A DNA stretch of 64,000 bases from Mizuhopecten yessoensis. Lineage: Eukaryota. The first letter of the stretch is position 1, and each line of letters begins with the position of its first letter. The stretch spans positions 66,378-130,377 of the forward strand of contig NW_018406643.1 in the NCBI RefSeq assembly GCF_002113885.1. Reading direction: 5' to 3'. Positions 18,333 through 61,485 of the stretch are shown here, piece after piece. The position numbers were made by a program, and so were the translations under genes. The notes beneath the pieces are model-generated. The model did no database searches and was not told the origin of the DNA. It saw only the letters and a program-made list of their open reading frames with translations.

Positions 18333-19655
18333 ATGATCTACTGTTTCGACGACTTTCAGCTAAAGCATCTTTGTGATGTGATTGAGGCTGAGAGACGCGT
18401 CCGTGAAAGGCTTTACAACGAGTTAACATGGACAAACGCTTGGTCACCAGGGGGGATGACCAGGGGCCGGAGACCCAGGTCAGGGAAGAGTCAGAAGCAG
18501 ACACTGAAAAAACGACCTTCATCTGCCAGGAAATACGATGAAAGGTACGAGTCAGACACGTCACGTGACGAAGGAACGCTCGTGAAAGATCGGCCAAGTT
18601 CCGCTCGACTTCCACGTGAGAAAATAAAAGAAGTTTCAAAGAGAAAGCCTAAATCGCACGCTTTAGAATATGGATCTGAAGCTTCATACGAAGAAAGTCT
18701 ACGCCTCAAAAAACGACCTCAATCCGCGCGAGAGGCGCGTGAAAAGGTGAAGGAGGATGTGAGGAGAAAACCTAGAACACTCGCGTTCGAGATTGGGTCT
18801 GAGTCAAAATCTGTAGCTGTGAAATGGGGAACGGATCCTCGGAATCTCTCGGTGACTATGGGAGATGGGTATGGGAGAAAAGCACGCCAACAAAGAAAAC
18901 CGGAACCGGAACATGACAGGTTTGTTATCAGTAACTTTGGTAAGGGGAGCTCATTCCAAGTAAATACAGGAAGAACCACAAAGGACCCTACTAACATAAC
19001 AATTGACAATGTACGGAGGGGCACATCCGGTCCCAAAGAAACCCTTCGCGTGACGGGAGGGGGAACGAACGTCGTAATTCATAATCCAAAAAGAACGGGA
19101 TTACCTAATAAAGGATCGAACACCATTCATGTGGCTAGTGGAGATACTGACGTCGTTGTTCACAAACCACAAAACGAGGACAGTGATTCTAGTCAAAGTA
19201 ATATAATTCGAAAAGAGCGCAAACCAAAGAAGTCACAAAAAAGGATCAAGGATACAAGTAGAAATGCTTTTGAGAATAACAATGCTATTACATTTTCTGA
19301 GGAAACAGGCACCCAGACGGCCTGGATGGATACAGATCCAGACCCAGCGCCTACTTCCGGTTCTTGTCCGCCGTCCCGGCGTATCAAGTTCATGGGCGAG
19401 GACCGAACGCACCGGGAGTATAAGACCGCCTTCATCGACGACCAAAAGCTCGTTCGGCCAATGACAGACGATGATATCCCACTCGTGGTTGAAGTCGTTC
19501 AACCGGATGAAGACGACGAGGAATATGTGGATGAAAAATCCGTGCAAGAAAATGACCGTCGACCGGAAGTGATACACTATATAGACAAAACAGTACCTGC
19601 TCGCGCCATAGAACCGTTCGAGCCAGTATTTGTTATGCCACATCCGGCATGGGAG
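18333..19655 (+). CDS. Cluster gene A exon 1 (441 codons); uncharacterised basic/disordered protein, ~513 aa spliced
   Basis: Long GC-elevated ORF from ATG; ends EVIHYID...EPFEPVFVMPHPAWE at consensus donor GAG|gtaagt, phase 0. Confidence 0.85.
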
Positions 19656-20151
19656 GTAAGTCTAGTATTTCCTAAATAAACTGGTTTCCGATAAGTGGCG
19701 CCCATAATATACAAATGCGTAAAAATGTTGGTTTCAACCTTTTCACCTTTTACCGATTTTAGATACAATGTATAAGAACTGTACTAAGAGGTAATTTAAG
19801 ATAAAATGTTATTTTCCTTGCCTTATCTTTATAAGAAATATAATCTGAAGCTATAGTCATCATTTGTTTAATGTTTATGTTTATTCATAGATTAAATTTC
19901 CCATGATTGAATATGTAAATGTTATTTTTAAACACAAAGGAAGTCTGTAACTATATCTACAACCTATGATCAGAATGGTTAAGTAAAGTATTAAGTATAT
20001 GTTTAGGATATTATTTTTCATTGAACTTAAATATATATAAATCACCACCCTCTCAGAATCCTAAAGAATTGTGAGATACGTGACGGATTTGTTTCTGTAA
20101 CCATGTTTCAACTACATGATCTTACAAAAATGTGACAACCTGTTATTGCAG

Positions 20152-20370
20152 CCGGAATCCCGAGACAAACGCCCCCACACCCCAGGGAGAGTAAAATCCC
20201 GGCCTCCCCTTCCCCCGCGCCAGTACCGCCCCCTAGATGTGTATGACCGCAGGAGTGCCGATACCAACGACCGTTTCCTTGTTGTCAAGACTCGAGCCCC
20301 GCCCCGGAAACCACCACGCCCAACAATCAACTACCACCAACATGATGACGCAGTTTTTTCCGTGTACTGA
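20152..20370 (+). CDS. Cluster gene A exon 2 (terminal)
   Basis: Acceptor tgttattgcag|CCG, phase 0; PESRDKRPHTP...RPLDVYDRRSADTNDRFLVVKTR...stop, homologous to terminal exons of B, E, F and G. Confidence 0.8.
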   Translation, partial: PESRDKRPHTPGRVKSRPPLPPRQYRPLDVYDRRSADTNDRFLVVKTRAPPRKPPRPTINYHQHDDAVFSVY

Positions 20371-23300
20371 AGACTATTTAAATGGACACTGAAATCAAAT
20401 TGGATGATTGACATAGGTTCAATGATACAAACATGTTAAGTGGTTTACTACAGGTTCTCACAGTTTCTGAAGATAAACACGATTTAAGTTGTACCAAAAT
20501 TTTAGTTTTTTATCTAGAATATTTCTTATTATGGTGTAGGGAAGTTGAACCATGTTTTGTCCTCTACTGATGCAGCAATGAAACCTGTCTTATTTGACAT
20601 CCTGTGGAACACATCACATTGGTCAGATTAGACAGGAACTGTGAATGCACATGTTGTATTTGACAATTTTCATAAGAATGAAAGGCTGACATATTTTTGT
20701 TGGATTATTACATTTAAGACTCTGTAAATTTCAATTCAATTTTTCTCTATGTTAAGGGGGTAAACGCACAAACGTTGGTTTCAGGATCGGCGAAGACTCG
20801 GTGACCGTCGCCACTTTCGGAAACGTCGTAAACGAGTTTCTCGTTGACGGAAAATGCCGACAGATTCCGTTTGGAGAACAAGATGAATTCCACACAATCT
20901 AAGTATATCAAAAGCTAGTTCATAATGAAAACAAAGTTTAGAAATGTACCGTTACATGTAGTTATTGAACTGAGGCGAAGCGTTGACCACTTTTACACTG
21001 TGTATGATATAACAGACTATTACATTTCATCATACTGTATACAGCTTTCTATTATAAGCAAATGAATGCAAGTCCGTGGTAGGAAACCTTAATTAACTGT
21101 GGTGTTGGGTACTCTACAAATGTACTGAGACAAGAGACACCCTATTATAGCCTATATTTAAGGGCTGTACATGGGTTTCCTCTGATTTCCGGAACTAGTT
21201 TATATTACCGTTATTTTTTCCAGTATCATAGAGGTTCTGAAGTTTCCATAATTACAATCAATAAAATAAAATTAAAATGTAAAGTGTCAAAAAAGAAATG
21301 AGAAGTAGCTGTATTTTTCTTACATCTATCATCTTTCTTCCTTAATATCTGGCTCATTCGATTTTCAGGAAAGGTACAATGAAGGGTTTTTGATGTGTAT
21401 ATTGAATATTCACATCCAGCGAAGGTTAAAACTGAGAAACCCTTTAAAATTGAAAATAGACCCGTCCTATATAAGACAATGCTACTTAGCTTACAGATCG
21501 GCAGGGAAGGGGTTTGAAACGTGCCAAAACGCAATAATACTTTCACCCGAATGTATATATAATATTAACCGTATTTGTGATTTATTTGGATATTATCATT
21601 TTCAAGGAAAACAATATCATCTAAAATACTTATTAGGTTTTTCTCCTTTGAAATAATGTTATTAAATGTGTAACTTGTATTTATTCAAGAAATGTCATAC
21701 TCGGAGTAATTGTGTTATTATCATTATGGTACAGTAGACTGTTGTTCTAAGACAGGGACAACACTGGGTTGAAGTTGTAAAGCATCATCGCCCGAGGAAA
21801 GTGACGTCACCGAATCGGTAAATTCCGCTAGTGATCGGTACTTTCCGATGTTTGTGAAAAGAACGTGTGATTGGAATCTATATAACCAAAATTCGGGAAA
21901 TGTGTTGCTAAGGACGCATGCCATTTTCAATATAAATATTTTGTGCCTTTAGTAAATTAACGAAGTCTAAAAGTAGATCCAATGCAGATATTAAAGGCTC
22001 CTATAAGTGTGCCGCAACTCTTTTAGAAAGATTATAAATGTTACATAGCATACATCCTTAATCAGACATTTTATTATTTTTTATTATGATACCAGGAAAA
22101 CAGTTGAAACCTGACATACAACTTTTCTCCCACAAAGAGTGTTAATAAATGGGACGTTGCAAAGAATTGTATTTGCTTGATAAGAATTATATTGGGTCAC
22201 ATGACAGGGGTTTTGACACTCTATTGAGTGTATTTGTTCAGTTCTATTCTCGGCACGTTCGTTTCATTTCATCCAAACGAAGTGAGCCAACTCACAGGGA
22301 CCGGAGAATTTGTTACAGCTATATTTTGACCTAAGCTACATTCTCAGGTCCCTGTGAACCAACTCTATTACAGTAAAAAAAGAATGCAAAGTAATTCTGG
22401 GTAATTGATTTAGCCTTGAGGAGAATTGGTTAAGTCGTGTAGGTAAACAACAGTGTGCCGAATCACTCGGCAGACGACCCACCTGGTTAATCAATGATGT
22501 TGATAAAGTACACTTGGATAGATAAATAAAAGCGATTCGTTCTTTTAATTGGTATCATTATTTTGCAAACAGTTTCATTGGCAAATAAAATATTGTCATT
22601 TGAGTATAGTTCTATAGCTCTATAATGATAGCTCTAATGGTTGCTAGTTAATGTCGACAATAACATTGTCAGGAACTATTGATGTATTCGTGATTAGAAC
22701 TCAATGCCAAACAGTTACTGCGAGTGTAAACCAAGACTCAAACGCTAACTAATTCGTGTTAAGGATCCCGCAGCACTGCCAAAAACCGTAACAAGCTTAA
22801 GCTTTAGGAAACGGGTTTTTTCCTTAATCATTTCTGAAAAGAAAAACAGGAGAGAAAAAAATAGCAATCGAGTTTGGTCAAGTGTCAGAAAGGGACGCGA
22901 AGATACATGTAGGCATAATGTGGCCCTTCTTTTCGCTCCCCAACGAGTGGTGGTGTATAATCTAACCCGAGCTAGTTAAGTTTACCGAGTGTCTTTCACA
23001 ATTGTAAGTATGATAATATATACCATCACGAGTCTGGGGACCCTTTTCTCCATAATGATCAGATAGTACACCTATAGAGCACCATCTGTCTCTCACGGAA
23101 ATACATTATTCCTGTTCCCTATGGGGAAGCAACGATGACCTCAAAATGAAAGATGGCGTCGCAAATAATTGTTACTTGACGTCATAGTTCGAAGATTGAC
23201 CAATGAAATCACGTCCACGATGTTACCCACTAGTGGGTTACCAAACAATGGTTAACCAACTCCTAGCAGGTGTATCCAATGAGTTGGGATTAAAGAAACC

Positions 23301-25649
23301 CATAGTGGTTGTAGAAGAAATGTACTTATGCAATCATTTATTAATGTACGTAATCCTATATACAAAGATGTTGATTTGATTTTTGTAATAAATATATTAT
23401 GTAACAATGGAATTGTCATCGCTTTGCTTTTTTAATACATTGAGTGAGGAAAATTATAGCAAAAATTGAAGTCATTGAGCTGACGGGGTTTTTTTCCTCG
23501 TGGAAACGACGAACCTCAATCCTACAGGTACCCCAATCAACAATCGCCATTTATAAACATACAGTGGTCCCTTTTTGCCACAAACACACAGGGATAATCA
23601 CATGAAGTTTAGCTCTCGGTATACTAGCAACACAATGTGTGGTATATGTGTTAATCAATAACAATCGAAAAACTTCAGCACTGAAATGATTTATGGACAT
23701 TGTTCAAATGGAAATATGCATGTGCCGTCTCTGGGGGCCAATATTACTTCACACGTCATTCAACAAGGGAGTAATTTAAAATCTATATTCTTGTTTACTG
23801 AAACACACTACAAAAACTATCACCAAAATCAATATGAACGATCAGTGGAATTGAGTGGCACCCGTGATGAATGGTAGATGGCATTTACCAGTCACGTGCA
23901 GGTACGGTCACGTGATAACAAGATACACGTCAGATAAGCCAACTACACATGGTTACACCGAGCTTGCGAATGTTTACAATGACGAATTAGTGTTGCTTCA
24001 AATATCATGACAGAAAATATGAATTCCGGTTAATGTTTTAAAAGATTGTACCCTCGTAAGGTCAGAACTCTTCAAGTTGGAACTCTATGAAGTATACCAT
24101 GAAAATAGAGAAAGATGTTTCATCAGAGTTTGTTAAGTCAGACCTTGAATATTGGAAATGGAAAAGAGTCGCCTCCTTCTGGCGTTTACACTTTGATAGC
24201 TCCCATTGTGACGTCAAAATATCCCTGAGAAATGCAGTAATTTTCTCTGAACGAATTTTCATACGTTCCATCTTGTTTAATGTTGATATGAATATCATAA
24301 TTTCATATCAAATATAACCAACAAATTCATTTTGCTGACTATGTGGTTATATCGACTCAAACAGTGATATAGACCCGAATTCATCTCGGTTAATATACTT
24401 TCACAGGTTCATATAACCACATATTCACCTCAATAAAAGACCATAATTGACATTATCTCAAAGTGACTACGGCGTCTTTGGCAAATCGAGTCAAGGAAAT
24501 GCGAACTTTATTTAATATAAGACAGCATATTTTATGAGATGAGATATATATATGTGTATATATGGGGTAATAACCTTATGAAACATCAGTGTTTTAATCT
24601 GATCGACCCGCTGACATGCTCTTTCAAAATAATATAGTGGTAGGGATACACTGCTTTAAAATCATGACTGACATGTACATGTATATATATGTATATGTAT
24701 GTATCTGCATAGAACTGTACTGTGCTACATCTGTACGCTAGCATGATATGGGGAGTGGAAGAGGGGTAGATGAGTTTAAAAACTCCCTAGATAAGACGAT
24801 ATGTCGGTATGTTAAGGACAAATACACAATATGTGCCTTCAACGATACAGTTAAGTCGTTTCGTCGCACCGGATCGTGACGGAAGCATTGTTTTACAGCG
24901 CTTAAAGCCCCAACACCCGTGTACATTGTATATAAGTGGGCCTATCGTTAACGGTTTATATTACCAAACCGTCTTGACTTCCCTGATAAGGTTCCAATAA
25001 AAAAGATTACAATTGTTTGCGTTAGATTTCTTACCAGGGGAAATAAGTCCCCCGAATTACATGTACGCACGTACCAACAGCGATATCATTTATGGAAAAA
25101 ATATATGTATATAACAGGATTTCAAGCACCACGAAAAATTGATTTTCCGTCGTCGTAGTGTTGGTGGCGTTGGAGGTGGCTTTATGTATTTTTATAATGG
25201 GACTCAAAGAGATATTTCAATGTAAGGTAGATTGTTTACCTGTGTATAAGTAGTAGAGGGTTATTATTCAATTACGGTAGAGGTGAAGGGTACAGGCAGG
25301 TGCTCGTATCGTAATAACCGTTGCAGTGTAAGAGACATTTACAGGTTCTCCATGCTACATGCCATATGAGTCATTAGTGGAATACATTACACACGTGTGT
25401 CTGGTTAACATTTTTGTAAAGACTCCTATATAGGTGGTTTAAAATCCCGGGAACGATATAGTATCCTTGAGCAACGAGACATTATATCTGGACGATAGGT
25501 GTGATATATATGCACACCTGGATATTTTACCTGGTCGCTTTCAGGTGAATGTATAAAGGTTTTCAACGCCAGTCCGTAAAGATAACTACTACACGGGACG
25601 GGGTATCGGATGTATATGTCATAAGGGACGTCCCCTTTCTAGAAACAAC

Positions 25650-26408
25650 ATGGCGCAAGGAAACAGTTCGTCTAAACAAATTGTGGTGACAAATCGGCGA
25701 AAGAATCCCTCTCAACAGGCCGAATTAGAGGCAATAACATCACCGCGACAAACACTTGGTAAGAAACCACACCCCTCTCGATTCGAAGGAGGCGTGCAGA
25801 TTTCGTTGGAAACGTCGGAAACGCTGATATCTGCTAAGAAATCTAGCAAGAAAAAATCCAAAAATTCTAAGAAAGGTGAAAATTCCAAAGCAAAGGATAG
25901 AGAGACATTAAAGAATGTGAAAGATTCCAGTGCAAATGAAAATGTTATTCCGAAGGATAAATTTAGTAGTCCGGTTAAACTTATTCCTAGACCTGGATCC
26001 GAGGATAGCGTTAGTTCGTCGATGAGACAGGAAAGGGAACGATTGTCTTCCCGGAAAGAAAGTTCGTTCTCCACCTACATTGAGATTACCCATAATGCAT
26101 CTCAGGACCTTATAGTGGTAGAAAACGCCGATTCGGATTGGTCTGACTCTGTTGAGCTTATTCCGGAAGTTGAAAATGTGGAACCCCTAAAAACTGCAAA
26201 ACCGGAAGTTGATAAATTAACTGGAGAAAATGAAGCAAAACCAAGGACGAAAAAAAGGCGCGATGAAAAGGGACGACTAAGGTCAAACTCTGCCAATGAC
26301 AAGGACGAGCTTGAGGATCGAGCGAAACACGTGATTTTGATAGATTTGGAGACGATTACACAGGAAGTGCATGCTGAACCGATTTATGTCCCTTACGACA
26401 TATGGGAG
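25650..26408 (+). CDS. Cluster gene B exon 1 (253 codons); ~337 aa spliced
   Basis: ATG in good context (acaacATGG); ends HVILIDL...EPIYVPYDIWE at donor GAG|gtttgt, the same position as in gene A. Confidence 0.82.
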
Positions 26409-26519
26409 GTTTGTCAAACTTCTAAACTATGCATGTGTTAATAGCACTTAACAGGTTAACCCATATAATAGGGGGGTTTACCGTAAACTGTGAACTCGGT
26501 CTTATGCAGTGGCAGGTGT

Positions 26520-27068: not shown

Positions 27069-27323
27069 CCCAAACGACGCACGCGCAAGAAGGGCAAGCA
27101 GACGATGGTGCGCGTGGGGGGAGGCTTCATGGACTTGCCATACTATCTCCACTACCACGTGCCAATAAAGGTCTACCAGCTTAAACCGTACGCCCAGCTC
27201 TTCAACAAACATATGCTCATGATCAAGTCTAAACGGCCGGAATCGGCCACAGACCACAAACAATATGACCGGCCGAGCTGGACAACCATGAACAAAGGTT
27301 TCAAAGCCTTTGCACGTATATGA
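27069..27323 (+). CDS. Cluster gene B exon 2; partial GAS2-related (GAR) motif
   Basis: Acceptor tttatctcttccttag|CCC, phase 0; PKRRTRKKGKQTMVRVGGGFMDLPYYLHYHVPIKVY...MLMIKSKRPESA...PSWT. Confidence 0.85.
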   Translation, partial: PKRRTRKKGKQTMVRVGGGFMDLPYYLHYHVPIKVYQLKPYAQLFNKHMLMIKSKRPESATDHKQYDRPSWTTMNKGFKAFARI

Positions 27324-32106: not shown

Positions 32107-32706
32107 ATGGCGAGTGAGTTTTTTGCAAGGAAGTTAAACCTGGAGCTGGCCTTGAACCCGCTGTTCCATGGTCCGCACGAGGAGCTTATGGAGGAAACAC
32201 CCCCGGAAAAGGAGGTCAAGGCCCCGAAAAGAAGAGAACATACACATAGTGCTTCGCGAATTCATGGCGGCCATAACACCGGAAGTCAATCAAAATTCAC
32301 CACCGGAAGTCATATAAACAGTTTTGAGTTTAAAAATCGCAATCCGAAAGGTGTATATGACTTTCTTAAAGTTAAAATGGACCGTGAGATTGCTAGAACT
32401 AAAACGACTAAAATTCGAAAATTCTCTGGCAAAATAAAAAAGGTGGATGAGACAGAATCCGGAAATAGTGATAAAACAGAAAGGGTAGAAGTAATTGTCG
32501 AAGTGGAAGCGGATACGAAAAATACGGAAAGAACTAGTGATACATCGGAACCTAACAGCTATCAACAGACAGTAAAATGTGTGGTTCCAAAAACCGGAAG
32601 TGAAAAGACAGGCATGGTACCGGAAATACTACATTATTCGGACGATTTTTCAGAGGGTCCTTTGGAGGTGTATGAGCCGGTATTCGTGAGGTTTCCGGTG
32701 TGGAAG
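32107..32706 (+). CDS. Cluster gene C exon 1 (200 codons)
   Basis: ATG context gaaATGG; ends PEILHYSDD...EVYEPVFVRFPVWK at donor AAG|gtataa, phase 0, homologous to the exon-1 ends of A and D. Confidence 0.8.
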
Positions 32707-32956: not shown

Positions 32957-33038
32957 CCAGCCAAACTCAACCACAGCTAAAGGAAATGAGAAACCTACTC
33001 TCGCAGTGTCCAGTACTGGGCGACATGTTGGATCATAG
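32957..33038 (+). CDS. Possible short terminal exon of gene C (tandem acceptors)
   Basis: ttttatattgcag|ccag|: the first AG gives PAKLNHS*, the second (32961) gives PNSTTAKGNEKPTLAVSSTGRHVGS*. No family motif in either. Confidence 0.35.
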
Positions 33039-33182
33039 CTAAAGGAATTTACGGAGAGCGTTCGGGCAGTTTCAAGACATTAAGCATGATCTCGGAGAAA
33101 AATAATAATCTATGAAAATTAAGTAAATACAGTCTAGATTATTTCCTTCTTGATTAGAAGCCACAATATTGAAAGATGATTG

Positions 33183-33718
33183 ATGTTTCCCATTAGCGCG
33201 AATGTTTCTCATTATAATGTATGTTTCCTATAAGAGCGTATGTTTCCCATTAGAGTTCGTATTTCCCATTTGAGCGCATGTTTTCTGTTTGTGTGTGTTT
33301 CCCGTTAGAGTGATGTTTCCCATAAACGCGATTGGTTCCCATTAAAGTGTACGTTTCCTATTAGACTGTACATTTCCCGTTAGTTATGTTTCCCATTTGA
33401 GTGTATGTTTCTTGTTAATTCATGTTTCCCGTTAGTGTAGGGTTCCTATTAGAATGAATGTTTTCCCGTCTTTATGTTTCCCATTAGGGTGTATGTTTCC
33501 CACTAGGGTGTATGTTTCCCATTAGGGTGTATGTTTCCCATTAGGTTTATGTTTCCCATTAGGGTGTATGTTTCCCATTAGGTTGTATGTTTTTTATTAG
33601 TTATTGATACTTATATTTATTNTTTTCCTCTTAGCGTATGTTTCCTATTAGAGTGAATGTTTCCCGTTAGTTATGTTTCCCATTAGAGTGTATTTTTCTT
33701 ATTAGTTAATGTTTCCCG
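33183..33718. repeat. Degenerate 19-bp minisatellite, ~28 copies
   Basis: Unit ccattagggtgtatgtttc, best conserved at 33475-33590. Confidence 0.88.
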
Positions 33719-37800: not shown

Positions 37801-38547
37801 ATGGCCACCATCGAGTGCTGGCAACCATATACGCCTCTGGACCAATTACTTTCCTCCACCCTAGTGCTGACGGACGGAGAGGGGGATGTCGAGCACGTGA
37901 AGAAGGAACTCCCAAGGTCAACCCGACGGGCCATCAAGTTCATACGGAACCAAAAACTCCGACCGAGACCCGGTTTCCAACGACGGGAGACTTGGATGGA
38001 AAACCAGCTTCGGTTATCAGGAGACGCTGTTTACCTCGACCTGGTCAAGACAAACAATCACTCGACTTTACGGCGTGAATCGTCCCAGTCAAAAAACTCC
38101 TCGACAGAAAACAAAAGACGATGGATTCATTTAGATTTATTAATGGATCCAAGTATTAAGGAATCTTCCAAACGCCTCGTCAGGACCCGTCCATCACAGA
38201 ATGTCGTATACAGAAGGGAAAATGTGGATAGAGCTGTATATTCATTAAAAGAACCTTTTGAGCCTATCCCGGTATACGAACAGCAGATACAGAGGATGGA
38301 AAAGCGTTCAAGTAGAAGCCCTAGACATACCAACAGGATTAAGCGTCTCGGTGATTCTGACAGGAGTAAGAGTTTGGAAGACATCGATAGAAGTGAAACT
38401 CCGCGTGATGGTTCAAAAGGAAACAACACAGGGGTCGTCTCAAAACCAAAAAACTACACCGAGATTCTTCATTACGTCGACGACGCAAAATCCATGGGTG
38501 CAATTGATTCGTTCGAACCTATCTACGTCATCAACAGGAAATCAAAG
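37801..38547 (+). CDS. Cluster gene D exon 1 (249 codons)
   Basis: ATG context acaATGG; ends TEILHYVDD...DSFEPIYVINRKSK at donor AAG|gtatgt, phase 0. Confidence 0.82.
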
Positions 38548-39010: not shown

Positions 39011-39091
39011 GAGGTCAGAGAATGCTCCTCTGATATAGAATCGTTAGGACTCGATTCTGACCAAAGTGACGTCACCAGTCAGGGTTACTGA
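39011..39091 (+). CDS. Possible short acidic terminal exon of gene D
   Basis: Acceptor ccatttttattttttattag|GAG, phase 0; EVRECSSDIESLGLDSDQSDVTSQGY*; the 463-bp intron is similar in size to those of paralogues. No family motif. Confidence 0.4.
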   Translation, partial: EVRECSSDIESLGLDSDQSDVTSQGY

Positions 39092-42002
39092 AGACGGTAA
39101 AATTCACCAGATCTTAGTTTTAGATTATATTCATCTATTTATTTTTATATCATTATATAGTTAGCAAGTCTCGATATGTCGAAGTCATTTGAACTAAACA
39201 ATTTTTAAACTTCGGGATAGGTTCGGTGTAGTACTACACCAAAAATGCACTAAAATTAATATAAAACAAACAGGAACACATGTGCCAGGTTCCTGTATAT
39301 CAAAACATAAATTTGTATTAATAGGAAAACTCGAACTAATCGACTTCGAAATAGCGAGGTTTTGCTATTAACAATACCGTACTAACTTTACCAAACATAT
39401 TATACAGTCGTACAAGACACAGTTTATGGAAGGTACCGTCGAGAGAATAACTAGAACATAATGAATTTACCACCATAAATCGTGTCGTCGGCTTGTGGTA
39501 TAGCTAGGCCAGACAAAACAATTGTTATTTCCGCTTTCGACCTTCAGCCTTCAAAAACCATGATAAACTGACTATTGTTTTTATTTGGCAAACTATTTCA
39601 ACAAATATCGCATATCGGGACAGCTTTTCTGACTTAAAAGGTGCTTGTTTGGAATCAATTGGGTGTTGTTTAGTTAAAGGCGTTAAACCTAGGGTAGGCT
39701 GAAAAAGTGGACACATAAACATTTCTGGCAAAATGTAGAAAATTATTAATACATTTTCTATCATTCGTAATTATACAGTGTAGCCATCCCGCTAGTAACA
39801 AAAGGTATGTTGTGGGTCAGGGTTTTGTTTGCGTTTGCATGAACCATGTATAGAGCTCTTTCTTATCCAGCTTCGTCTTGCTTTCGCTGTTTGCTTGTTC
39901 CTTTGTCTGCTGTGATTGAGCTCTAAATAAAGGGTTTACATGTCTGTTTTTTCGCTGTACACCTTGACGAGTTCTTTGATCTTGTATGTTGCATTGTTTA
40001 CGTTAATTGCATGAGTTGATAATTAGTACGCAACCGCTTTTAACTCATTCACCCCTGATATTTCATATTGAACTATTCCAACCTTTGAATTGGAAGAGTT
40101 CAAATGTGTCTTCAGGGTTGAAAGAGTTAATGAGTTTTTTTTACACAGACAATGCATATCACATATAAACAGAACTCCATTGGTATGTATTATCATCATA
40201 AAGAAACATACCGACTCCAAGACAGCTATTGTATTTGTTGATTTCTTCTCTTCTTCCATTTTAAACGTCGCGCTACATGTTGTCCATTATGACGTCACAC
40301 TCAGGTAAAAACCGGCCTGGCCACAGTGTCCCGATAATTTGTTACATTTGGTATTTTTGTACCTTTCCTTGTGTGTAGAGAGTAATATTAGACGTTTTAA
40401 GGGTTTGAATCAAATCGTCGGGTCCCTGTGGTTCTGATCAATAATGAAGTTTATCGAAGTGTAATTATAAATTGAAAATGTTGGTTACGTGTTGTTTTAT
40501 AAAAATGTAGTCAATAAGAATGTGGCTTCTGATAATAGTTCTGCTTTAGTAGCATGCTAGTCATCTATGATATGTCGCACACTATAACAGATTTGCGTTA
40601 ATACGCAACTACGTGTTCGATATTCTTTTAATTGCATGATGCTTGGGTCGGCAAAATAGCATCTAATTGCATAACATGACATCGGTGTTATATTGATAAC
40701 ATATTAGGATAGTCAAGAACAACTCTCCAAGCTTCCGGTTTCTTATCGGGTACTTCAACCTGCATTGTTTATTGATAGGTAAATATTTACATCACCGTTG
40801 GTTACAACAGGGTATCGTGCAGATGAAACCGAGTACAACACTTCAGATATCATATACAACATATTCGGTTTTGGCTATGACTAATAGCACGGTGACGCAG
40901 TGCATTTATAGTTTTTAATAGTTAAAGTCTCCGTGCATTTAAAATGTCAGGGACAGATTTTATCGTAAAATACTTGAACACTTACAGGTATCTTATTTTT
41001 TAATTTGAAAAGTTGGGTATATGCATATGATTTAACTTGTTAGGCAAATTTGGTTATTTTTTGTTAAAAATGGTTTAAAATTAAGGAAATATCTTTGTTG
41101 ATACAAGTGCTATCATATAATATAAGTGATCACATTAAGTAGAATTCGGCTATAAAATACTTACATGTGATATGTTTACCTGCGAGTTTGTCAAATCACA
41201 TTTTGTCAATCCGTAATTATGTTAAAAAAAACACCTTTCTATAAACTTAATTTATTTTATAACAATTATGATACAAGTTACTCATTTGGAAGGAAACAAG
41301 GAGGGGGGGGGNATATTTATTGAGCGGTCAGACCGTTCGAATCTGGTCTACTACAGTATATACATGTATCGTATTTCATATAAAACAATCGCCACAGTAT
41401 ATTTAACTAACTAGGTATTAGATTACAGAGGTTTGGTAGATGTGACGTACACACGTGTGTTGTTGTTGTACTGTGGACACGTGTGTTATTGGAAATGTCC
41501 ATTGTAACTGGGGGTCCAGTTACGTTTAAATTATCGTGACCTTCTCGGCGAGGCTCGGTGAGCAATAACGTTCCTAACAAATCTTTTAACTATCAAACTC
41601 AATAGCTTAAATGTATAGTAGATAATTATTGTCTGGGTCGAGTACATGTTTGTAACAAGTCGGTCCTTCAAAATCCTGTCCCGTATTATGTACCCAGCCT
41701 TGGAATCGTAAGTGGCCTAATTTGGCAAATTACGTATTCTATAGATGATCGCGTGAATTTTGATCTGAAATTGACATCTATTACGATATATAACATTCTT
41801 ACAAACACGGGGTCTTCCACTATGGATTATTCAAATGTGTTGACGGTTTCTAAGTACGCGATTACCAACGTTGGATTATTTCACACCCTTTCCGAAAGTG
41901 ATAGCCGCAAGCACGTTAACACGAGCTACTCTGACATTTTCACGTTAGTATCCAGTATATACTGTCAAAGTGGACGAATTCAAGGCCGTTGACGCTCTCA
42001 GG

Positions 42003-42731
42003 ATGAAGTTGTGTGAAGAACTAAAACAATGGAAACTTTTCCTACCAAATCAACCTCTTATGTTACCTTTTGCACCGAGCATGCCTAGACGGAAATCCCG
42101 ATCTCGGCCTCGCCGGAAACGGAAACCACCAGACCCACCGGAGAAAGTTACCATCACAGTGAATGACACAGGTGGACGAACAGTTGCCGTGGAGCGCGTA
42201 GTCCCCAAACGAGAAAAACAAGTCTTGCGGAGGCTGAGCAGAGAGGAAGCAGGCGAAAATGAGGCTGCAAATAGTCGATCTCAAAATATATCAACACAAA
42301 CTACTCTACAGGACCTTGAATTTCTCATCACGGACCCCCGAATTCAGGAGACCAGGGGGCCGAGGAGGGCGTGGCTGCCCGAGGAGGTGGTCTACACGCG
42401 CCAGACCACTGCCCACCGGACTTACCACACGGGCGACACCACCTTGAACGTGGAACATAGGTCCACAGATAATATTGTTGTCCAAATCGACAAACACGGC
42501 TCCGCCCGAGTGGACAATGAAAAGGGACAAGAGGACAAGGAGAACGGACGCAGGGAAAACGAACATGGACAAAGGGTAGAAGGGGGAGATACGAGGGACA
42601 AAGAAGAAACAAACAGAAAGTTTACAAATAATGGCAAACGAATTACATTTTCAGACGAAACTGATAAGACAATGGCACAGACCGACAAGGAAAAAACGGA
42701 CGGAACGACAAGTGTTCGTGCCCCAAGCAAG
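42003..42731 (+). CDS. Cluster gene E exon 1 (start uncertain; frame open from 41949); ~331 aa spliced
   Basis: First in-frame ATG at 42003; ends ...KRITFSDETDKTMAQT...VRAPSK at donor AAG|gtaagg, phase 0. Confidence 0.78.
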
Positions 42732-43404: not shown

Positions 43405-43671
43405 GTGGCTAAAGCTTGCGGTCATAAGCTACCAATGGTTCGTGTTGGAGGGGGGTGGATGGAAGTGCCAGATTATCTCCGTTCTCACGTACCGATGCAC
43501 GTGCATGTCGAGAATACAAAAGACGGACAAGAAGGGAACTTGATAATCAGGTCACAGCGACCTAGATCACAAATGTTCTCGAAAAAGGGAGAAAGTCCGA
43601 GCTGGACGGCAACACTGAGCAGGGGTACCAAAGGGAGCGCTTCAACGACAATGAGACAAAGACTTGTGTAG
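43405..43671 (+). CDS. Cluster gene E exon 2; partial GAR motif
   Basis: Acceptor ctattattacag|GTG, phase 0; VAKACGHKLPMVRVGGGWMEVPDYLRSHVPMHVH...NLIIRSQRPRS...PSWT. Confidence 0.85.
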   Translation: MAKACGHKLPMVRVGGGWMEVPDYLRSHVPMHVHVENTKDGQEGNLIIRSQRPRSQMFSKKGESPSWTATLSRGTKGSASTTMRQRLV

Positions 43672-47597: not shown

Positions 47598-48509
47598 ATG
47601 TCTCACAGAGAACATCGGACATCCTCGTCAAGGCGATCCCGGAGACGTGAAAAGCGGAGCGTGTCGGATGATTCCGATGATGGCGGCCGGATTGTTGAAG
47701 TGAGGCGACGTCCGGCGTCGGCAAGCGACCTCCGACTTCCCGAATATCGTCATAACACCAGTGACGAGAAGGGACAGAAAAAGGCACACCGGAAGGAGAA
47801 AAAAATCACGCGGAACACCAGAGAGGAACGTACTCTCGAATATGTAACAAATAGTGGACATCACGAGCAGCGCCGACCCGTAACGAGGGCGGCGTATCAG
47901 AGTGACGGCGAGGAGATTAATGACAGTGATACCGGAAGTGATAGTACCGTCCGGCGCATGAAGGAACATATGCGCTACTACGCAACACAAAATACCCAGG
48001 CTGCGTCGGAAACAGGCGAGCGACGCATTGTGTACTATAATGCGCGTAACAATGGCCGTCCAATGTCGGACGTCGGCACACAGCTCGTGCAGCATGTCCG
48101 ACAGGACAGTATGCGAGAAAACCGACGTGTCAGCAGACCTCGGTCGGCATTCAGTGAACAGATCTTACATACACGAGATGGCGACCGTCTTGTTGAGCTG
48201 GAGAAACGGGAGGAGGGCAACAAAGTATATTACAACTACCGCCTGAAGGAAGAGGCCAAGCCGCCTCCAGTCCCAGTCAGACGCATGCGTAACGTGGGGG
48301 TACAAATGACCACTAAATACGTTGTTGATCAACCACCTCCGGTCAAAACCAAGAGCGCCGGTACCCAGACTCCGGCACCACCGCCCAAACCTCGCCCAAG
48401 GACACCTCCAAGACTGATTAGAGTAGTTCGCCCAGAGACACCTCCTCTTAGAGTAGTTCGCCCAGAGACACCCCCTCCCGTGGAGGTTATGGAGCCCGTA
48501 CCCGCAGTG
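47598..48509 (+). CDS. Cluster gene F exon 1 (304 codons); ~377 aa spliced
   Basis: Arg/Ser-rich then Pro-rich ORF; ends EVMEPVPAV at consensus donor GTG|gtaagt, phase 0; clearly similar to gene G exon 1. Confidence 0.87.
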
Positions 48510-49301: not shown

Positions 49302-49523
49302 ATTCCAAAGGCCAAGTCAGTGATGGTGCGCGTGGGAGGAGGCTGGATGAAGGTCGAGCATCATCGCAATCATCACATACCTGTCAAAGTATACGAACAT
49401 AAGCGACGTGCTAGCGCTGACGATAACAAGTTCCTTTTCATTAAGTCCCGGTTCGCACGGAAGAAGAAACAAGTACCAATAGCTTATAAAATGTATAGAG
49501 AGAAACTGGCACAGGCCAACTAG
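49302..49523 (+). CDS. Cluster gene F exon 2; partial GAR motif
   Basis: Acceptor ctttctcactctttcag|ATT, phase 0; IPKAKSVMVRVGGGWMKVEHHRNHHIPVKVYE...KFLFIKSR...VPIAYKMYREK. Confidence 0.87.
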   Translation: MPKAKSVMVRVGGGWMKVEHHRNHHIPVKVYEHKRRASADDNKFLFIKSRFARKKKQVPIAYKMYREKLAQAN

Positions 49524-53730: not shown

Positions 53731-54318
53731 ATGTCGCGCAACGGATACACGCGTACGTCCAGACAGAACAGTGTCCGTTCACAAAATCGGAATCACTATC
53801 TTTCGGACGGATATACGGACGACGATCGTCGTTACGTCATCCGTGATGACGTCATGACGGACAAGGAGGCGTGGGTAGAGGATTACGTGTACGGCCGGTC
53901 CAGAGGGAGCACGCGCCGACCCCAGTCCGCGGTGGTGGCTTCAACGGGACGATATCGGCCTCGGTCCCCGGGACTCGTCGAGGTGGGGCGATATGAAAAG
54001 GATGGGAAAGTTTACTGTGATTACCGGATGTCGGACGAAAATTACTCAGAACCTGTCGTTATAAGACGTAAGCCCGCCCCTCCACCCAAGCCTAAAGTAC
54101 GCCATGTCGGGGTACAGATGACAACGAATTACACTGCCCCTCCCCCTAAGAAGGTCTCAACCCGGAATGCATACACTCAGACCAGAGTAGCCACGCGCCA
54201 AGCTTACACGCAAAGTAGGCCCCCGAAGACCCCTAAAAGCAAGGAACCTGTCCCCATTGTGGTGATTCCGGCCCCTTCACCACCACGGACTCCATCACCC
54301 CCTCCCCCCAAAATAGCG
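53731..54318 (+). CDS. Cluster gene G exon 1 (196 codons); ~289 aa spliced
   Basis: ATG context caaaATGT; shares LVE.....[DG].KVY..YR and R[NH]VGVQMTT with gene F; ends PPPPKIA at donor GCG|gtaagt, phase 0. Confidence 0.85.
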
Positions 54319-55218
54319 GTAAGTTGACCCCATTAACCTCAAAAACCGTTAACGTAAAAATAGTCGAATCAATCCGCGTACGTTTGATAAATAGTTACAT
54401 TTGTATGTTATCTTTTAACAGCTCATCTTTGTAATAATCAACCAGCTTCTGGGAATGTGTTTTGCTGTGAACGGGCGAGGACGGAAATAAATTCAAATAT
54501 CATTTTTGCTGTTTTTTGTTTGGGAGGGTGTACATATGGAATACTTTAGTACATGGACGTATATACAGATCTTCTTCGCTCAGTATCACTCAAGTTAGGC
54601 ACTATTTCCGGAAAAAAGGAATGTTTGTTGTATTCGTATTTGATAGATAGTGTGTCGCAGAAAAGTGGTGGCGAAACTGCACACAATAATTATAATTTGT
54701 TTATTATTGGAAGCATGTGTTTATTGATTAAGGGATGAATCGCGTTGCCAGACTGACATGATACCTGTATCCATGTGTACTTAATCAGTGATCCGTATCG
54801 TCACGCCTGTATGCGTATATACCTATATCGATCCGCTAATATTAAAGCCGGGTTACTGAGGCTGATACGGAACGGTGTTCACAAGCATCTGTCAACACGC
54901 CAGATCGCCAATCAATACAGCTACATCCGTATTGAAATTAGCAACTTGTAACGGGATAGATATTGCTTACACCTGTTATTAAGGCATGGAATGTGTGACG
55001 ATTCGCTCGAAACGGCTTAAGGGTATATGCTATCTAACAATGATATGTATCGCCTTCACACAAGAGTTAAACATACAAAATAATATTTTGGAACATATTT
55101 CCTGTAGTTTCTACTTGCAATGTGTATATCGAGACAAGTATTTGTAGAATATCCTAATGTGGTTGGGTCTAGAATCACTGGACGTGTTTTGTGATGATTC
55201 TGCTTTGTTGCATCCCAC

Positions 55219-55772
55219 GACATGTCGTAGTAGGCGACTTACGTGGGGTCCTCACTACATGTCGTGGGAAGCGACTTACGTGGGGTCCTCACTACATGTC
55301 GTAGGAGGCGACTTACGTGGGGTCCTCACTACATGTCGTGGGAGGCGACTTACGTGGGGTCACCGCTACATGTCGTAGTAGGCGACTTACGTGGGGTCAC
55401 CACTACATGTCGTGGGAGGCGACTTACGTGGGGTCCTCACTACATGTCGTGGGAAGCGACTTACGTGGGGTCACCGCTACATGTCGTAGTAGGCGACTTA
55501 CGTGGGGTCACCACTACATGTCGTGGGAGGCGACTTACGTGGGGATCACCACTACATGTCGTAGGAGGCGACTTACGTGGGGGTCACCACTACATGTCGT
55601 AGGAGGCGACTTACGTGGGGTCCTCACTACATGTCGTAGGAGGCGACTTACGTGGGGTCGTCACTACATGTCGTAGGAGGCGACTTACGTGGGGTCCTCA
55701 CTAAATGTCGTAGGAGGCGACTTACGTGGGGTCCTCACTACATGTCGTAGGAGGCGACTTACGTGGGGTCAC
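55219..55772. repeat. 37-bp GC-rich minisatellite, ~15 copies (intron of gene G)
   Basis: Unit acatgtcgtaggaggcgacttacgtggggtcctcact, head-to-tail with no spacers. Confidence 0.96.
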
Positions 55773-55997
55773 CTGCGGAACTGGGGGTTTACTTTTATGT
55801 CTTCTGTTAGGGGAACATTGAATAAACAAAAACATTATCCACTGCCCCCATCGCAACATTTTGAATCTTTCTTTCTTTTTCTCTCACTTCCCTACCGAGT
55901 AATCTTTCATTTTGGAGGTGTCTCCCTAAGTACCCTTCTTCGTATGACCTTGGCTGTTTCAAGGACGTTTAACCTCAAACAAACAAAAAACAATTAT

Positions 55998-56475
55998 TTT
56001 GACCAACCGCTAGATTCTGCATGAGTTGACCAACCGCTAGATTCTGAATGAGTTGGCCAACCGCTAGATTCTGCTTTGAGCTGATCAACCGCTAGATTCT
56101 GAATGAGTTGGCCAACCGCTAGATTCTGCATGAGTTGACCAACCGCTAAATTCTCCTTGAGTTGACCAACCGCTAGATTCTCCATGAGTTGGCCAACCGC
56201 TAGATTCTGCTTTGAGCTGACCAACCGCTGGCTTTTGTTTTGATTTGACCACCAACTGAAAAATTCTGCTTTGAGTTGACCAACGACTTACTTCTGTTTT
56301 GAGTTCACCAACTGCAAATTCTGCTGCGAGTTGACCATTCGCTAGCTTCAGCTTTGACCTACAGCTACATTTTCTGCTTTTCACAAACAGCAAGCTTTTC
56401 CTTTTGACCGATTGCTAGTCATTGCTTCTGGTCAATTGCTAGTTTCTGCTTTAGACCAACTGCTAGCTTCAGCTT
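55998..56475. repeat. 27-bp minisatellite decaying 5' to 3'
   Basis: Unit gttgaccaaccgctagattctgcatga; ~9 well-conserved copies, then degenerate. Confidence 0.9.
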
Positions 56476-59400: not shown

Positions 59401-60062
59401 CCCCGATACGGAGTGTTCTGCATAGAAAATATTGCATCTTATGTTTCAGAGTTAAAAATATAATCTACTTACCGAATGTAGACCTAGACCAATTTTTCAA
59501 AAAGAATGGTTAGCTTAATGAGGAAACATATAAATGATTTATTTCTCTATTGTCCTCGAGTATACATATTCATGGATTATGTTTTCTAATGACTTGAAAT
59601 GTTCTTTTTTACGCTTTTGGAAATATCATTGATGTCAATTAATTGTCCATTTGTCATTTAGAAACCAAGAAGGGCAACAACTATGCACTGTCGTTGAGTA
59701 AAAGTTAACAATACAATTTTATTTAAAGTGTTCGCGATCCTCACCGGTGAGATATGTACATGTACCATTAAGCTAATATAGATTAGAAATTTGTGTAATG
59801 GAAAATGTACGCATGATTGACAGTTTACAAAGTGTATTGGATTATGATTGAACTACATAGATACATACAAACAGTTGTTATGGGTATGTATATACAAGTA
59901 ATTACACCTGGAATTACTGATCCTGTTAAGGATGTGTGCTACCTAAAGTTCAAATCGTGCACGAGCTATCTCCCTTGATATATTTAACGTTTACCATTCA
60001 GAATTGTAATCGCGATGGACTAGTTCAGAAAGTCTCGTTGGACTGGATATTCAATCACGTTA

Positions 60063-60971
60063 GTGTGGTGGCTGATTTCGGCCATCTCGGGTTGTCGCAT
60101 TAGCGGGGGCGACAACGCGACAATGCGACAGACAAAAGATACCACGCCAACGCGACAAAATTAAGGCGACAACGCTAAAGAAAAAATCTGCCGCCTTGTT
60201 GGTGGTGGGGTACACTGCCGCCTTGTTGGTGGTGGGGTACACTGCCGCCTTGTTGGTGGTGGGGTACACTGCCGCCTTGTTGGTGGTGGGGTACACTGCC
60301 GCCTTGTTGGTGGTGGGGTACACTGCCGCCTTGTTGGTGGTGGGGTACACTGCCGCCTTGTTGGTGGTGGGGTACACTGCCGCCTTGTTGGTGGTGGGGT
60401 ACACTGCCGCCTTGTTGGTGGTGGGGTACACTGCCGCCTTGTTGGTGGTGGGGTACACTGCCGCCTTGTTGGTGGTGGGGTACACTGCCGCCTTGTTGGT
60501 GGTGGGGTACACTGCCGCCTTGTTGGTGGTGGGGTACACTGCCGCCTTGTTGGTGGTGGGGTACACTGCCGCCTTGTTGGTGGTGGGGTACACTGCCGCC
60601 TTGTTGGTGGTGGGGTACACTGCCGCCTTGTTGGTGGTGGGGTACACTGCCGCCTTGTTGGTGGTGGGGTACACTGCCGCCTTGTTGGTGGTGGGGTACA
60701 CTGCCGCCTTGTTGGTGGTGGGGTACACTGCCGCCTTGTTGGTGGTGGGGTACACTGCCGCCTTGTTGGTGGTGGGGTACACTGCCGCCTTGTTGGTGGT
60801 TGGGTACACTGCCGCCTTGTTGGTGGTGGGGTACACTGCCGCCTTGTTGGTGGGGTACACTGCCGCCTTGTTGGTAGTGGGGTACAGTGTCGCATTGACG
60901 CGTTCATTTTGTTGCCTTGTTGCGTTGGCGGGAAGGCGACAACGCGCGATGGCCGAAATCAGCCACCATAC
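60063..60971. mobile_element. Non-autonomous TIR element carrying an internal 27-bp minisatellite
   Basis: ~36-bp TIRs gtgtggtggctgatttcggccatctcgggttgtcgc / gcgacaacgcgcgatggccgaaatcagccaccatac; gtta on both sides (4-bp TSD). Confidence 0.85.
60188..60886. repeat. 27-bp minisatellite, ~26 almost perfect copies
   Basis: Unit cactgccgccttgttggtggtggggta. Confidence 0.98.
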
Positions 60972-61203
60972 GTTAAAGTGGATATTTTTCTTTGTATACA
61001 TTTGACCTGTATCTCGTTGTCTCCGCGAGCAGCTCAATATTTTGTAATCCAAAAGACACAGAGATTAGAAACTTAGCCTACCTGCCCTTGTATTCTAGAT
61101 TCTCCACCTGATAATTCTTCACAATACAGAAGCTTAGTGGGGATTAGACGCATTAAATGATGTCCATATCTCACGATCCTAAATATTGACTTTTCTATTG
61201 CAG

Positions 61204-61485
61204 GAACCACAGTACATATACGTGCCCAAGACCCGTCCAAAGCCGGTTGTCGTACATACCGAACACACCGGACGCGCAGGGTACTTGGTGTCCCAAAGGA
61301 GAAAGTCCTTGACGAGTTCCATGCCACTCAGGGTCATTGAGTACGATAACAACAGGAGTCTTAGGGACAAATATATTTACGTCCGGCCAAGGAGTGCAGT
61401 CGGACGCAGCAAACGGTCATTTGTACCTATGGGATACGAAATGTACATGGAGCGACCATACACAATACCTGATTATCCAAGATGA
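61204..61485 (+). CDS. Cluster gene G exon 2 (terminal)
   Basis: Acceptor gacttttctattgcag|GAA, phase 0; EPQYIYVPK...SMPLRVIEYDNNRSLRDKYIYVRPRSA...VPMGYEMYMER matches F exon 2 (IPVKVYE...KFLFIKSR...VPIAYKMYREK); AATAAA at 61600-61605. Confidence 0.8.
   Translation, partial: EPQYIYVPKTRPKPVVVHTEHTGRAGYLVSQRRKSLTSSMPLRVIEYDNNRSLRDKYIYVRPRSAVGRSKRSFVPMGYEMYMERPYTIPDYPR

What the first reader, a model, noticed from the sequence alone, without database searches (positions are those of the whole stretch)
18333..61485. Tandem array of seven diverged two-exon genes encoding an unrecognised family of disordered proteins with a GAR-like tail
Seen: seven GC-elevated + strand ORFs start every 4-7 kb (18333, 25650, 32107, 37801, 42003, 47598, 53731). 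Each ends in a phase-0 GT donor followed by a short phase-0 terminal exon. Overall similarity is too low to see, but overlapping motifs chain all seven: exon-1-end motif in A,B,C,D; MVRVGGG in B,E,F; PxxVY...[IV][KR] in A,B,E,F,G; PSWT in B,E; ITFS[ED]ET in A,E; VGVQMTT and VPxxYxMY in F,G. I recognise no named family with this architecture. Inference: an old lineage-specific expansion of microtubule/cilium/sperm-associated scaffold proteins.
Basis: partly seen in the sequence, partly recalled or inferred. Interest (0 to 1): 0.9.

Follow-up and report, generated by a model that had tools for sequence, protein, structure and literature searches.

The report
Scallop gene cluster with half-GAR tails
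Seven neighbouring scallop genes encode basic, probably disordered proteins; several end in the microtubule-touching half of a GAS2/GAR domain that lacks the zinc-binding part, so this looks like a bivalve-specific offshoot of a known cytoskeletal family rather than a wholly unknown one.

Summary
The window is Mizuhopecten yessoensis. The seven + strand ORFs are real, conserved, selected genes. All seven end exon 1 at a phase-0 GT. A, B, E, F and G have the predicted short last exon, matched by NCBI models (B) or scallop orthologues (A, E, F, G). dN/dS against Pecten maximus is 0.03-0.31.

Two points differ from the finding:
- C ends in a conserved 7-residue exon (32957-32977).
- D has no tail exon nearby. 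In Pecten it is annotated as spliced about 22 kb downstream to G's last exon, and F has isoforms that do the same.

The tail is not an unknown fold. B2, E2 and F2 match Pfam GAS2 (PF02187) positions 44-68 only, and solved GAS2 and MACF1 GAR domains. That part is strands beta4-beta5 with the glycine hairpin, plus helix alpha2. The zinc cysteines and the first half of the domain are missing. The intron sits where the scallop's own GAS2-like gene has one, in the same phase. A2 and G2 keep only the stretch after the hairpin.

A search of 1.84 billion proteins found 24 clusters. All named ones are molluscs, and two are already auto-labelled "GAR domain-containing".

Microtubule binding is inferred, not shown. 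RNA depth was too low for junction reads. Other first-stage notes on this same window reached similar readings.

The parts
18333..19655 (+). Gene A exon 1 (441 aa, basic and hydrophilic). It ends in the EVIHYxD...EPVFV motif and a phase-0 GTAAGT donor.
   Evidence: Orthologue P0016 is 83% identical.
20152..20370 (+). Gene A last exon (72 aa plus stop). The glycine hairpin is lost. The post-hairpin stretch (PLDVY...DRFLVVKTR) is kept.
   Evidence: hhalign against the tail family gives E 2.6e-5. The P0016 tail is 84% identical.
25650..26408 (+). Gene B exon 1 (253 aa), ending EPIYVPYDIWE then GT.
   Evidence: The NCBI protein P0009 equals B1 plus B2. dN/dS 0.31.
27069..27323 (+). Gene B last exon (84 aa plus stop): half-GAR (MVRVGGGF) plus tail with PSWT.
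   Evidence: Pfam GAS2 positions 44-68, 22.3 bits. 90% identical to Pecten, dN/dS 0.10.
32107..32706 (+). Gene C exon 1 (200 aa), ending EILHYSD...YEPVFVRFPVWK then GT.
   Evidence: dN/dS 0.18.
32957..32980 (+). Gene C last exon: 7 residues (PAKLNHS) plus stop. It is not GAR-like.
   Evidence: The NCBI model P0048 and orthologues P0049-51 keep it. Mapped with a CAG acceptor.
37801..38547 (+). Gene D exon 1 (249 aa), ending EILHYVDD...FEPIYVINRKSK then GT. It has no tail exon of its own.
   Evidence: RNA depth lies on the exon only. The Pecten D gene runs on to G's last exon.
42003..42731 (+). Gene E exon 1 (243 aa).
   Evidence: Pecten orthologue P0014 is 65% identical. RNA depth 0.3-2.6x.
43405..43671 (+). 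Gene E last exon (88 aa plus stop): half-GAR (MVRVGGGW) plus tail with PSWT.
   Evidence: Pfam GAS2 positions 47-68, 25.2 bits. 92% identical to Pecten, dN/dS 0.03.
47598..48509 (+). Gene F exon 1 (304 aa, net charge +22) with VGVQMTT and TQT motifs.
49302..49523 (+). Gene F last exon (73 aa plus stop): half-GAR plus the KFLFIKSRF...VPIAYKMYRE tail. Two internal phase-0 GT donors are used by NCBI isoforms that run on to G2.
   Evidence: Pfam GAS2 positions 44-68, 25.8 bits. 88% identical to Pecten, dN/dS 0.03. Isoforms P0001/P0002.
53731..54318 (+). Gene G exon 1 (196 aa, net charge +19), paralogous to F1 (VGVQMTT, TQT).
   Evidence: (F1-G1 E 1e-10 to 1e-12). dN/dS 0.08.
61204..61485 (+). G last exon (93 aa plus stop): degenerate hairpin, tail kept. 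It is also the annotated last exon of F isoforms here and of D in Pecten and Argopecten.
   Evidence: hhalign against the tail family gives E 2.2e-3. dN/dS 0.15.

Best explanation
This is a bivalve-specific cluster of real protein-coding genes. Each has one long exon encoding a basic, hydrophilic, probably disordered chain.

In B, E and F that exon is spliced in phase 0 to a short last exon derived from the last part of a GAS2-type gene. The last exon encodes strands beta4-beta5 with the glycine hairpin (VRVGGGW), helix alpha2, and a conserved stretch of 35-45 residues after it. It lacks the first half of the GAR domain and all zinc-binding cysteines.

A and G keep only the post-hairpin stretch. 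C has replaced the tail with 7 residues. D borrows G's last exon.

Inferred mechanism: the half-GAR tail is a small docking piece for the tubulin lattice. It is helped by the strongly basic disordered chain, and possibly by self-association or LC8 binding. These proteins would then act as microtubule-associated scaffolds.

Shown: gene structure, conservation, selection, homology of the tail to GAR, the shared intron position, and the restricted distribution.
Inferred: microtubule binding, dimerisation, and any tissue role.
For: Gene structure and conservation:
- The models match the NCBI protein for B and scallop orthologues for A, E, F and G.
- The order B-C-D-E-F-G is kept in Pecten maximus.
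- dN/dS is 0.03-0.31. The tails B2, E2 and F2 are the most constrained at 0.03-0.10.

Homology of the tail to GAR:
- All 20 tail sequences hit Pfam GAS2, but only positions about 37/43-68 of 69.
- The tail profile hits the GAS2 and MACF1 GAR structures 1v5r, 9kbw, 5ve9 and 5x57 at E 3e-8 to 1e-5.
- The GAS2 cryo-EM paper places microtubule contacts in beta3-beta4-beta5-alpha2. R252E, G255A/E, W257E and K266E weaken binding (PMC12084551).
- The R, the GGG and the H267 position are kept in B2, E2 and F2. W is kept in E2 and F2 (F in B2). The K266 position is changed in all three.

Origin:
- The scallop GAS2-like gene has a phase-0 intron between ...LVFVR and [14 protein letters not shown]. This is the same place and phase as the family's intron.
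- A member at C3316:540559 combines a canonical WDTLEHYL with the family tail.

Protein character:
- Chains are basic and hydrophilic (GRAVY -0.9 to -1.4, net charge up to +22). The AlphaFold model of orthologue P0003 is mostly below pLDDT 50.
- In GAS2 the region just after the GAR domain is needed for dimerisation and bundling.
Against: - No experiment or prediction here shows microtubule binding.
- The zinc site is reported to hold the GAR fold together, and it is absent. So is the first half of the domain. The piece may therefore not fold like a GAR.
- The AlphaFold model of the tail is only moderately confident (pLDDT 64.5). It has no significant structural match.
- The homodimer prediction gave no verdict.
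- A2 and G2 are conserved without the hairpin, so the hairpin cannot be the whole function.
- RNA runs gave only 0-4x depth and no listed junctions.
- Homology of the post-hairpin stretch to the GAS2 C-terminal region could not be tested with a tool-supplied GAS2 sequence.
Confidence: 0.6

Rival explanations
1. The tail no longer binds microtubules. It is a relic of a GAR exon reused as a different short interaction or self-association module. Its functional core would be the post-hairpin stretch (P-x-x-V-Y/I-E ... K/R-F/Y-L-x-I/V-K/R), the part shared by A, B, E, F and G.
For: - A2 and G2 lack the hairpin yet are 84% identical to their orthologues, with G2 dN/dS 0.15.
- The zinc ligands and the first half of the GAR are missing.
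- Zinc is reported as needed for GAR integrity.
- The model predicts the post-hairpin stretch as two strands, at moderate confidence.
Against: - R, GGG and W, the residues whose mutation weakens GAS2 binding, stay invariant or nearly so across 20 tails from at least four bivalve orders. That is hard to explain without the original contact.
- The tail exons carry a net charge of +8 to +15.
Confidence: 0.25
2. The array is not seven independent genes. It is, at least from D to G, one complex transcription unit in which alternative large first exons are spliced to shared downstream last exons.
For: - NCBI isoforms of F leave F2 at internal phase-0 donors and join G2.
- The Pecten maximus D gene spans E and F. 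Its 327-aa product equals D1 (241 aa) plus G2 (86 aa).
- The D isoform tails of Pecten and Argopecten map to G2 in another frame.
- There is no RNA depth for 1.4 kb after the D donor.
- Mytilus isoforms P0012 and P0013 share their first and last exons, and P0013 has an extra middle part.
Against: - A, B, C, E and F each have their own conserved last exon and stop codon.
- The long-range joins are automatic annotations that I could not check with reads. The only reads call covered 6 kb and depth was too low.
- Read-through chimeras are common in tandem arrays.
Confidence: 0.3
3. The ORFs are pseudogenes, chance ORFs or annotation artefacts.
For: - There is no Pfam hit for any exon 1.
- RNA depth is very low.
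Against: - Orthologues with intact frames occur in Pecten, Ylistrum and Argopecten.
- dN/dS is 0.03-0.31 with dS of 0.4-1.7.
- Splice sites and gene order are conserved.
Confidence: 0.02

Closest known systems
GAS2 and GAS2-like proteins (CH domain + GAR domain + C-terminal region)
   Same: - The last exon aligns to GAR beta4-beta5-alpha2, including VRVGGGW.
- The intron place and phase match the scallop's own GAS2-like gene.
- One family member still reads WDTLEHYL, as that gene does.
- A conserved region follows the GAR part. In GAS2 that region drives dimerisation.
   Different: - There is no CH domain.
- The first half of the GAR (alpha1, beta1, beta2, most of beta3) is absent.
- No zinc cysteines remain: DPC has become I/V-P-hydrophobic.
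- The N-terminal part is a long, fast-evolving disordered exon.
- The genes are tandemly multiplied.
- Some members (A, G) have lost the hairpin, and others (C, D) have lost the whole tail.
Spectraplakin GAR domains (MACF1/ACF7, dystonin, Shot)
   Same: The G-hairpin and alpha2 are shared. PDB 5ve9 and 5x57 are hit at about 1e-5.
   Different: - The two spectraplakin-type genes of the scallop split the GAR at another place, GKYR|FGDSQ.
- They read WVALDEFL or WVTLDEFL.
- The family is therefore closer to the GAS2-like lineage than to spectraplakins.
Clustered loci with variable first exons and shared last exons (protocadherin or UGT1A type)
   Same: Large alternative first exons lie in tandem on one strand. 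Annotation joins D1, F and G1 to the same last exon, G2.
   Different: Most units here keep a private last exon and stop. The sharing rests on automatic models only and was not verified with reads.

Membership tests
GAR / GAS2-related domain (Pfam PF02187) | Sequence match above the curated cut-off (21.3 bits) | tested here: met
   B2 scores 22.3, E2 25.2 and F2 25.8 bits. All 20 aligned tails match at E <= 0.01. A2 and G2 do not match Pfam.
GAR / GAS2-related domain (Pfam PF02187) | Whole domain of about 70 residues (alpha1-beta1-beta2-beta3-beta4-beta5-alpha2) | tested here: not met
   Matches cover model positions 43/44-68 only, or 37-67 in Pinctada P0021. The candidate hairpin in F1/G1 shows no similarity to canonical first-half exons (hhalign E 0.16).
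GAR / GAS2-related domain (Pfam PF02187) | Zinc site formed by conserved cysteines (CxC near the start, DPCxC at the end) | tested here: not met
   DPC is replaced by H-I/V-P-V/I/M-K/H in the tails. The exon with CxC is absent. The scallop's canonical genes do have CTCP and DPCRC.
GAR / GAS2-related domain (Pfam PF02187) | Glycine hairpin and contact residues (GAS2 R252, G254-256, W257, K266/H267) | tested here: met
   R and GGG are invariant and W nearly so in the 20 tails. H267 is kept, and K266 is changed to H, Y or S. The hairpin is lost in A2 and G2. Residue roles are taken from PMC12084551.
GAR / GAS2-related domain (Pfam PF02187) | Binds the microtubule lattice | not testable with these tools
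   No complete tubulin gene without introns could be referenced for a complex prediction. This needs a co-sedimentation or localisation assay.
GAS2 proper / GAS2-like gene lineage | Calponin-homology domain upstream of the GAR | tested here: not met
   No Pfam family reaches its cut-off in any exon 1.
GAS2 proper / GAS2-like gene lineage | Shared intron position and phase inside the GAR | tested here: met
   The GAS2-like gene on C3723 reads ...LVFVR|gtaagt and cag|[10 protein letters not shown], phase 0. The family exons start 9 residues before the R, also in phase 0.
GAS2 proper / GAS2-like gene lineage | C-terminal region that dimerises | tested here: inconclusive
   The homodimer prediction of the tail gave no verdict (score 0.00). 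No tool-supplied GAS2 C-terminal sequence was available for an alignment.
Variable-first-exon / shared-last-exon cluster | Several first exons spliced to one common downstream exon | tested here: inconclusive
   Annotation supports this for D (Pecten, Argopecten) and for F isoforms. No junction reads were obtained.

The most novel reading that the evidence does not exclude
A bivalve-specific family of disordered microtubule-associated proteins arose when the last exon of a GAS2-type gene was captured behind new, fast-evolving first exons. That exon encodes only the tubulin-contacting hairpin, one helix and a self-association tail. If so, it would be a natural minimal, zinc-free GAR module that still docks on microtubules. 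It would sit in a locus where several first exons can also share one last exon.
Probability: 0.35. Interest if true: 0.6.

Novelty: new variant of a known kind. Interest (0 to 1): 0.45.

Why it matters
The GAR domain is described as a zinc-stabilised fold of about 70 residues. Here a third of it has been kept for hundreds of millions of years without the zinc site. The kept third is the part reported to touch tubulin. It sits at the end of otherwise unalignable disordered proteins and is under strong purifying selection.

If it still binds microtubules, it defines the minimal working piece of a GAR. It would also give bivalves a private set of microtubule scaffolds, which could be tested in cilia, sperm or muscle.

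The locus is also a clear example of two things:
- A domain fragment spreading by exon capture at a conserved intron.
- Tandem paralogues that lose the domain stepwise (F/E/B, then A/G, then C/D).

Tried and rejected
- First half of the GAR hidden in exon 1. AlphaFold predicts a beta-hairpin in F1/G1 (LVEVE..EGNK.YYNY) that resembles GEGKYKIG by eye. Pfam finds nothing there, and hhalign against the scallop's canonical first-half exons gives E 0.16 over one column. Rejected.
- Fold searches. The full-length P0003 model (pLDDT 46) and the tail model (pLDDT 64.5) gave no significant Foldseek hit. 5x57 and 9kbw appear only at E 7-10 over 20-21 columns. VIA-align found nothing at Z >= 2.
- Homodimer prediction of the tail. 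No verdict, so it counts neither for nor against.
- Tubulin complex. Not attempted, because the genome's tubulin genes are split and no complete reading frame could be referenced.
- Tail-like exon downstream of the scallop GAS2-like GAR exon. None was found in the 1.5 kb held.
- First exon of the intermediate member at C3316:540559. No long ORF lies within 9 kb upstream.
- Junction reads. Four RNA runs gave 0-4x exon depth and no listed joints.
- Literature. No paper on these genes was found.
- Spliced models. I used each exon by reference, or the stored natural proteins that tools returned.
- The Ns at 33622 and 41312 were left as they are.
Full report
**Identity of the window.** Protein searches with exon 1 of F, D and C return 100% identical NCBI proteins of Mizuhopecten yessoensis. 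The window is contig C3316:66378-130377 of that assembly.

**The observation.**
- Seven + strand ORFs of 200-448 aa start at the stated places. Their GC is 0.43-0.56 against a background of about 0.33-0.38.
- Each ORF contains a phase-0 GT donor a few codons before its stop: A 19655, B 26408, C 32706, D 38547, E 42731, F 48509, G 54318.
- Phase-0 acceptors with pyrimidine tracts open short last exons for A (20152), B (27069), E (43405), F (49302) and G (61204). The introns are 496, 660, 673, 792 and 6885 nt long.
- Public proteins use exactly these models: P0009 for B in this species, and P0003-5 (F), P0014 (E), P0016 (A) and P0022 (G) in other scallops.
- C is different. Its NCBI model and three orthologues end in a 7-residue exon, mapped at 32957-32977.
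- D has no tail nearby. An older model uses an exon at 39011, but no RNA read lay there.

- The exon-1-end motif (E-I/V-L/I-H-Y-x-D ... E-P-I/V-F/Y-V) links C-D (E 4.7e-5), C-A (1.4e-4) and D-A (3.5e-5). In each case it sits at the very end of exon 1.
- F1 and G1 are clear paralogues (E 1e-10 to 1e-12).
- The A2 tail matches the tail family at 2.6e-5.
- G2 matches more weakly, at 2.2e-3.
- The chain therefore holds, with G2 as the weakest link.

**Are they genes?**
- The order B-C-D-E-F-G is kept in Pecten maximus.
- Nei-Gojobori dN/dS against Pecten is 0.18-0.31 for exons B1, C1, D1, E1 and F1, and 0.08 for G1. For the tails it is 0.10, 0.03, 0.03 and 0.15 for B2, E2, F2 and G2. dS ranges from 0.4 to 1.7.
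- The tails are 84-92% identical to Pecten, while most first exons are 54-70%.
- Four RNA runs of the species gave only 0-4x depth. That depth lay on D1, E1 and E2, with none in the introns. No joint reached the reporting threshold. This fits the models but is not junction evidence.

**What the tail is.**
- B2, E2 and F2 contain MVRVGGG[WF].
- They pass the Pfam GAS2 (PF02187) cut-off, but only over model positions 44-68 of 69.
- All 20 tails collected from the family behave the same way.
- A profile of them hits the solved GAR domains of GAS2 (1v5r, 9kbw) and MACF1 (5ve9, 5x57) at E 3e-8 to 1e-5.
- Against the GAS2-microtubule cryo-EM study (PMC12084551), the kept part is beta4, the glycine hairpin that enters the tubulin intradimer groove, beta5 and helix alpha2.
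- That study reports that R252E, G255A/E, W257E and K266E weaken binding.
- In the family, R and GGG are invariant and W is nearly so. The H267 position is kept. K266 is changed.
- Missing are the first half of the domain and all zinc cysteines. DPC reads I/V-P-hydrophobic. The same paper says zinc maintains the fold.

**Where the tail came from.**
- The genome has three canonical GAR genes.
- Two are spectraplakin-like and split the domain at GKYR|FGDSQ.
- The third is GAS2-like, on C3723. It has a phase-0 intron between ...LVFVR and [29 protein letters not shown].
- The family's last exons begin 9 residues before the R, in phase 0. Allowing for one residue of loop length, that is the same place.
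- A further member on the same scaffold, at C3316:540559, reads [22 protein letters not shown] and then continues with the family-type tail. It looks like an intermediate form.
- I infer that the last GAR exon of a GAS2-type gene was captured behind new first exons.
- Whether the EPxFV motif at the exon-1 end is the remnant of strand beta3 (LVFVR) is only a visual resemblance. In Pinctada P0021 the Pfam match does extend back to position 37.

**Distribution.**
- A HMMER search of 1.84 billion representative proteins with the tail profile found only 24 proteins at E <= 0.001.
- Those with names come from Mizuhopecten, Mytilus californianus, Tegillarca granosa, Pinctada imbricata and the gastropod Nucella lapillus. 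Two are auto-named "GAR domain-containing protein" by UniProt.
- The F-type tail is 69% identical between a scallop and Mytilus, while the rest of the protein is unalignable.
- In the scallop genome, all family-type tails detected lie on this one scaffold. Three are in the window and three lie 410-440 kb downstream.

**Protein character.**
- The first exons are hydrophilic (GRAVY -0.9 to -1.4), with about 70% disorder-promoting residues and a net charge of 0 to +22. The tails carry +8 to +15.
- AlphaFold on the F orthologue gives a mean pLDDT of 46, with 257 of 365 residues under 50.
- The tail alone, with 20 sequences, gives pLDDT 64.5. The model shows the hairpin, a helix and two further strands formed by the post-hairpin stretch.
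- Neither model has a significant structural match.

**Locus complexity.**
- NCBI isoforms X2 and X3 of F leave F2 at internal phase-0 donors (after WMK and after HIPVK) and join G2.
- In Pecten maximus the D gene spans E and F. Its 327-aa product equals D1 (241 aa) plus G2 (86 aa).
- The tails of another D isoform in Pecten and Argopecten map to G2 in a shifted frame.
- G2 may therefore serve as a shared last exon. I could not check this with reads.

**Mechanism.**
- My best reading is that B, E and F are disordered basic proteins docked on microtubules through the half-GAR hairpin.
- In GAS2 the region directly after the GAR domain is required for dimerisation, bundling and nucleation.
- The family's post-hairpin stretch sits in the same position and survives in A2 and G2 without the hairpin. 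It may be a self-association piece.
- From memory only, the end of vertebrate GAS2 resembles the KFLFIKSRF part. This was not verified with any tool.
- The homodimer prediction gave no verdict.
- F and G also carry conserved VGVQMTT and TQT motifs that fit LC8-type sites. This was not tested.

**Verdict.**
- The family is not unrecognised at the level of the tail.
- C and D do not fit the two-exon-with-tail model.
- The function remains inferred.
- I class it as a new variant of a known kind, of moderate interest.

Noticed in passing
window 7179-8147 (+): A single-exon ORF of 322 aa matches Pfam Sulfotransfer_2 (E 6e-41). It is a carbohydrate sulfotransferase gene upstream of the array and unrelated to it.
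   Followed up: partly
window 40039-40130: An element of about 90 nt has RNA depth of 150-250x in all four RNA runs. Reads continue into many different flanks, so it is a dispersed repeat inside the D-E spacer, not part of either gene.
   Followed up: no
window 55216-56357 and 60188-60897: Tandem repeats of 37, 27 and 27 nt (15, 13 and 26 copies) lie inside the 6.9-kb intron of gene G. The last one produces the long spurious ORFs on both strands at 60060-61052.
   Followed up: partly
window 48294-48370 and 54106-54190; also P0012, P0020, P0021: F1 and G1 share R-x-VGVQMTT-x-Y followed about 20 residues later by a TQT. This is kept in Pecten, Pinctada, Mytilus and (weaker) Tegillarca. A1 has TGTQT and E1 has STQT. 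These are candidate LC8 light-chain sites.
   Followed up: partly
G000:C3316:540559-540747, 557899-558111, 563528-567417: Three more family members lie 410-440 kb downstream on the same scaffold. One has a canonical-like WDTLEHYL, and one (P0019, 548 aa) is a two-exon gene that UniProt names GAR domain-containing protein.
   Followed up: partly
P0012 and P0013 (Mytilus californianus): Two isoforms share the first exon and the GAR-like last exon. The longer one has an extra middle part that resembles the end of scallop B1 (PE-x-ENVEPLK). This hints that F-like and B-like exons can belong to one gene.
   Followed up: partly
window 18333-19655 (A1): Exon 1 of A has internal repeats: twice RP-S/Q-SAR...REK-I/V-KE...RKP...GSE, and three short V-x-x-G-x-x-x-V-V-I/V-H-x-P units.
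   Followed up: no
window 33622 and 41312: Single N letters in the C-D and D-E spacers. They were left as they are.
   Followed up: no
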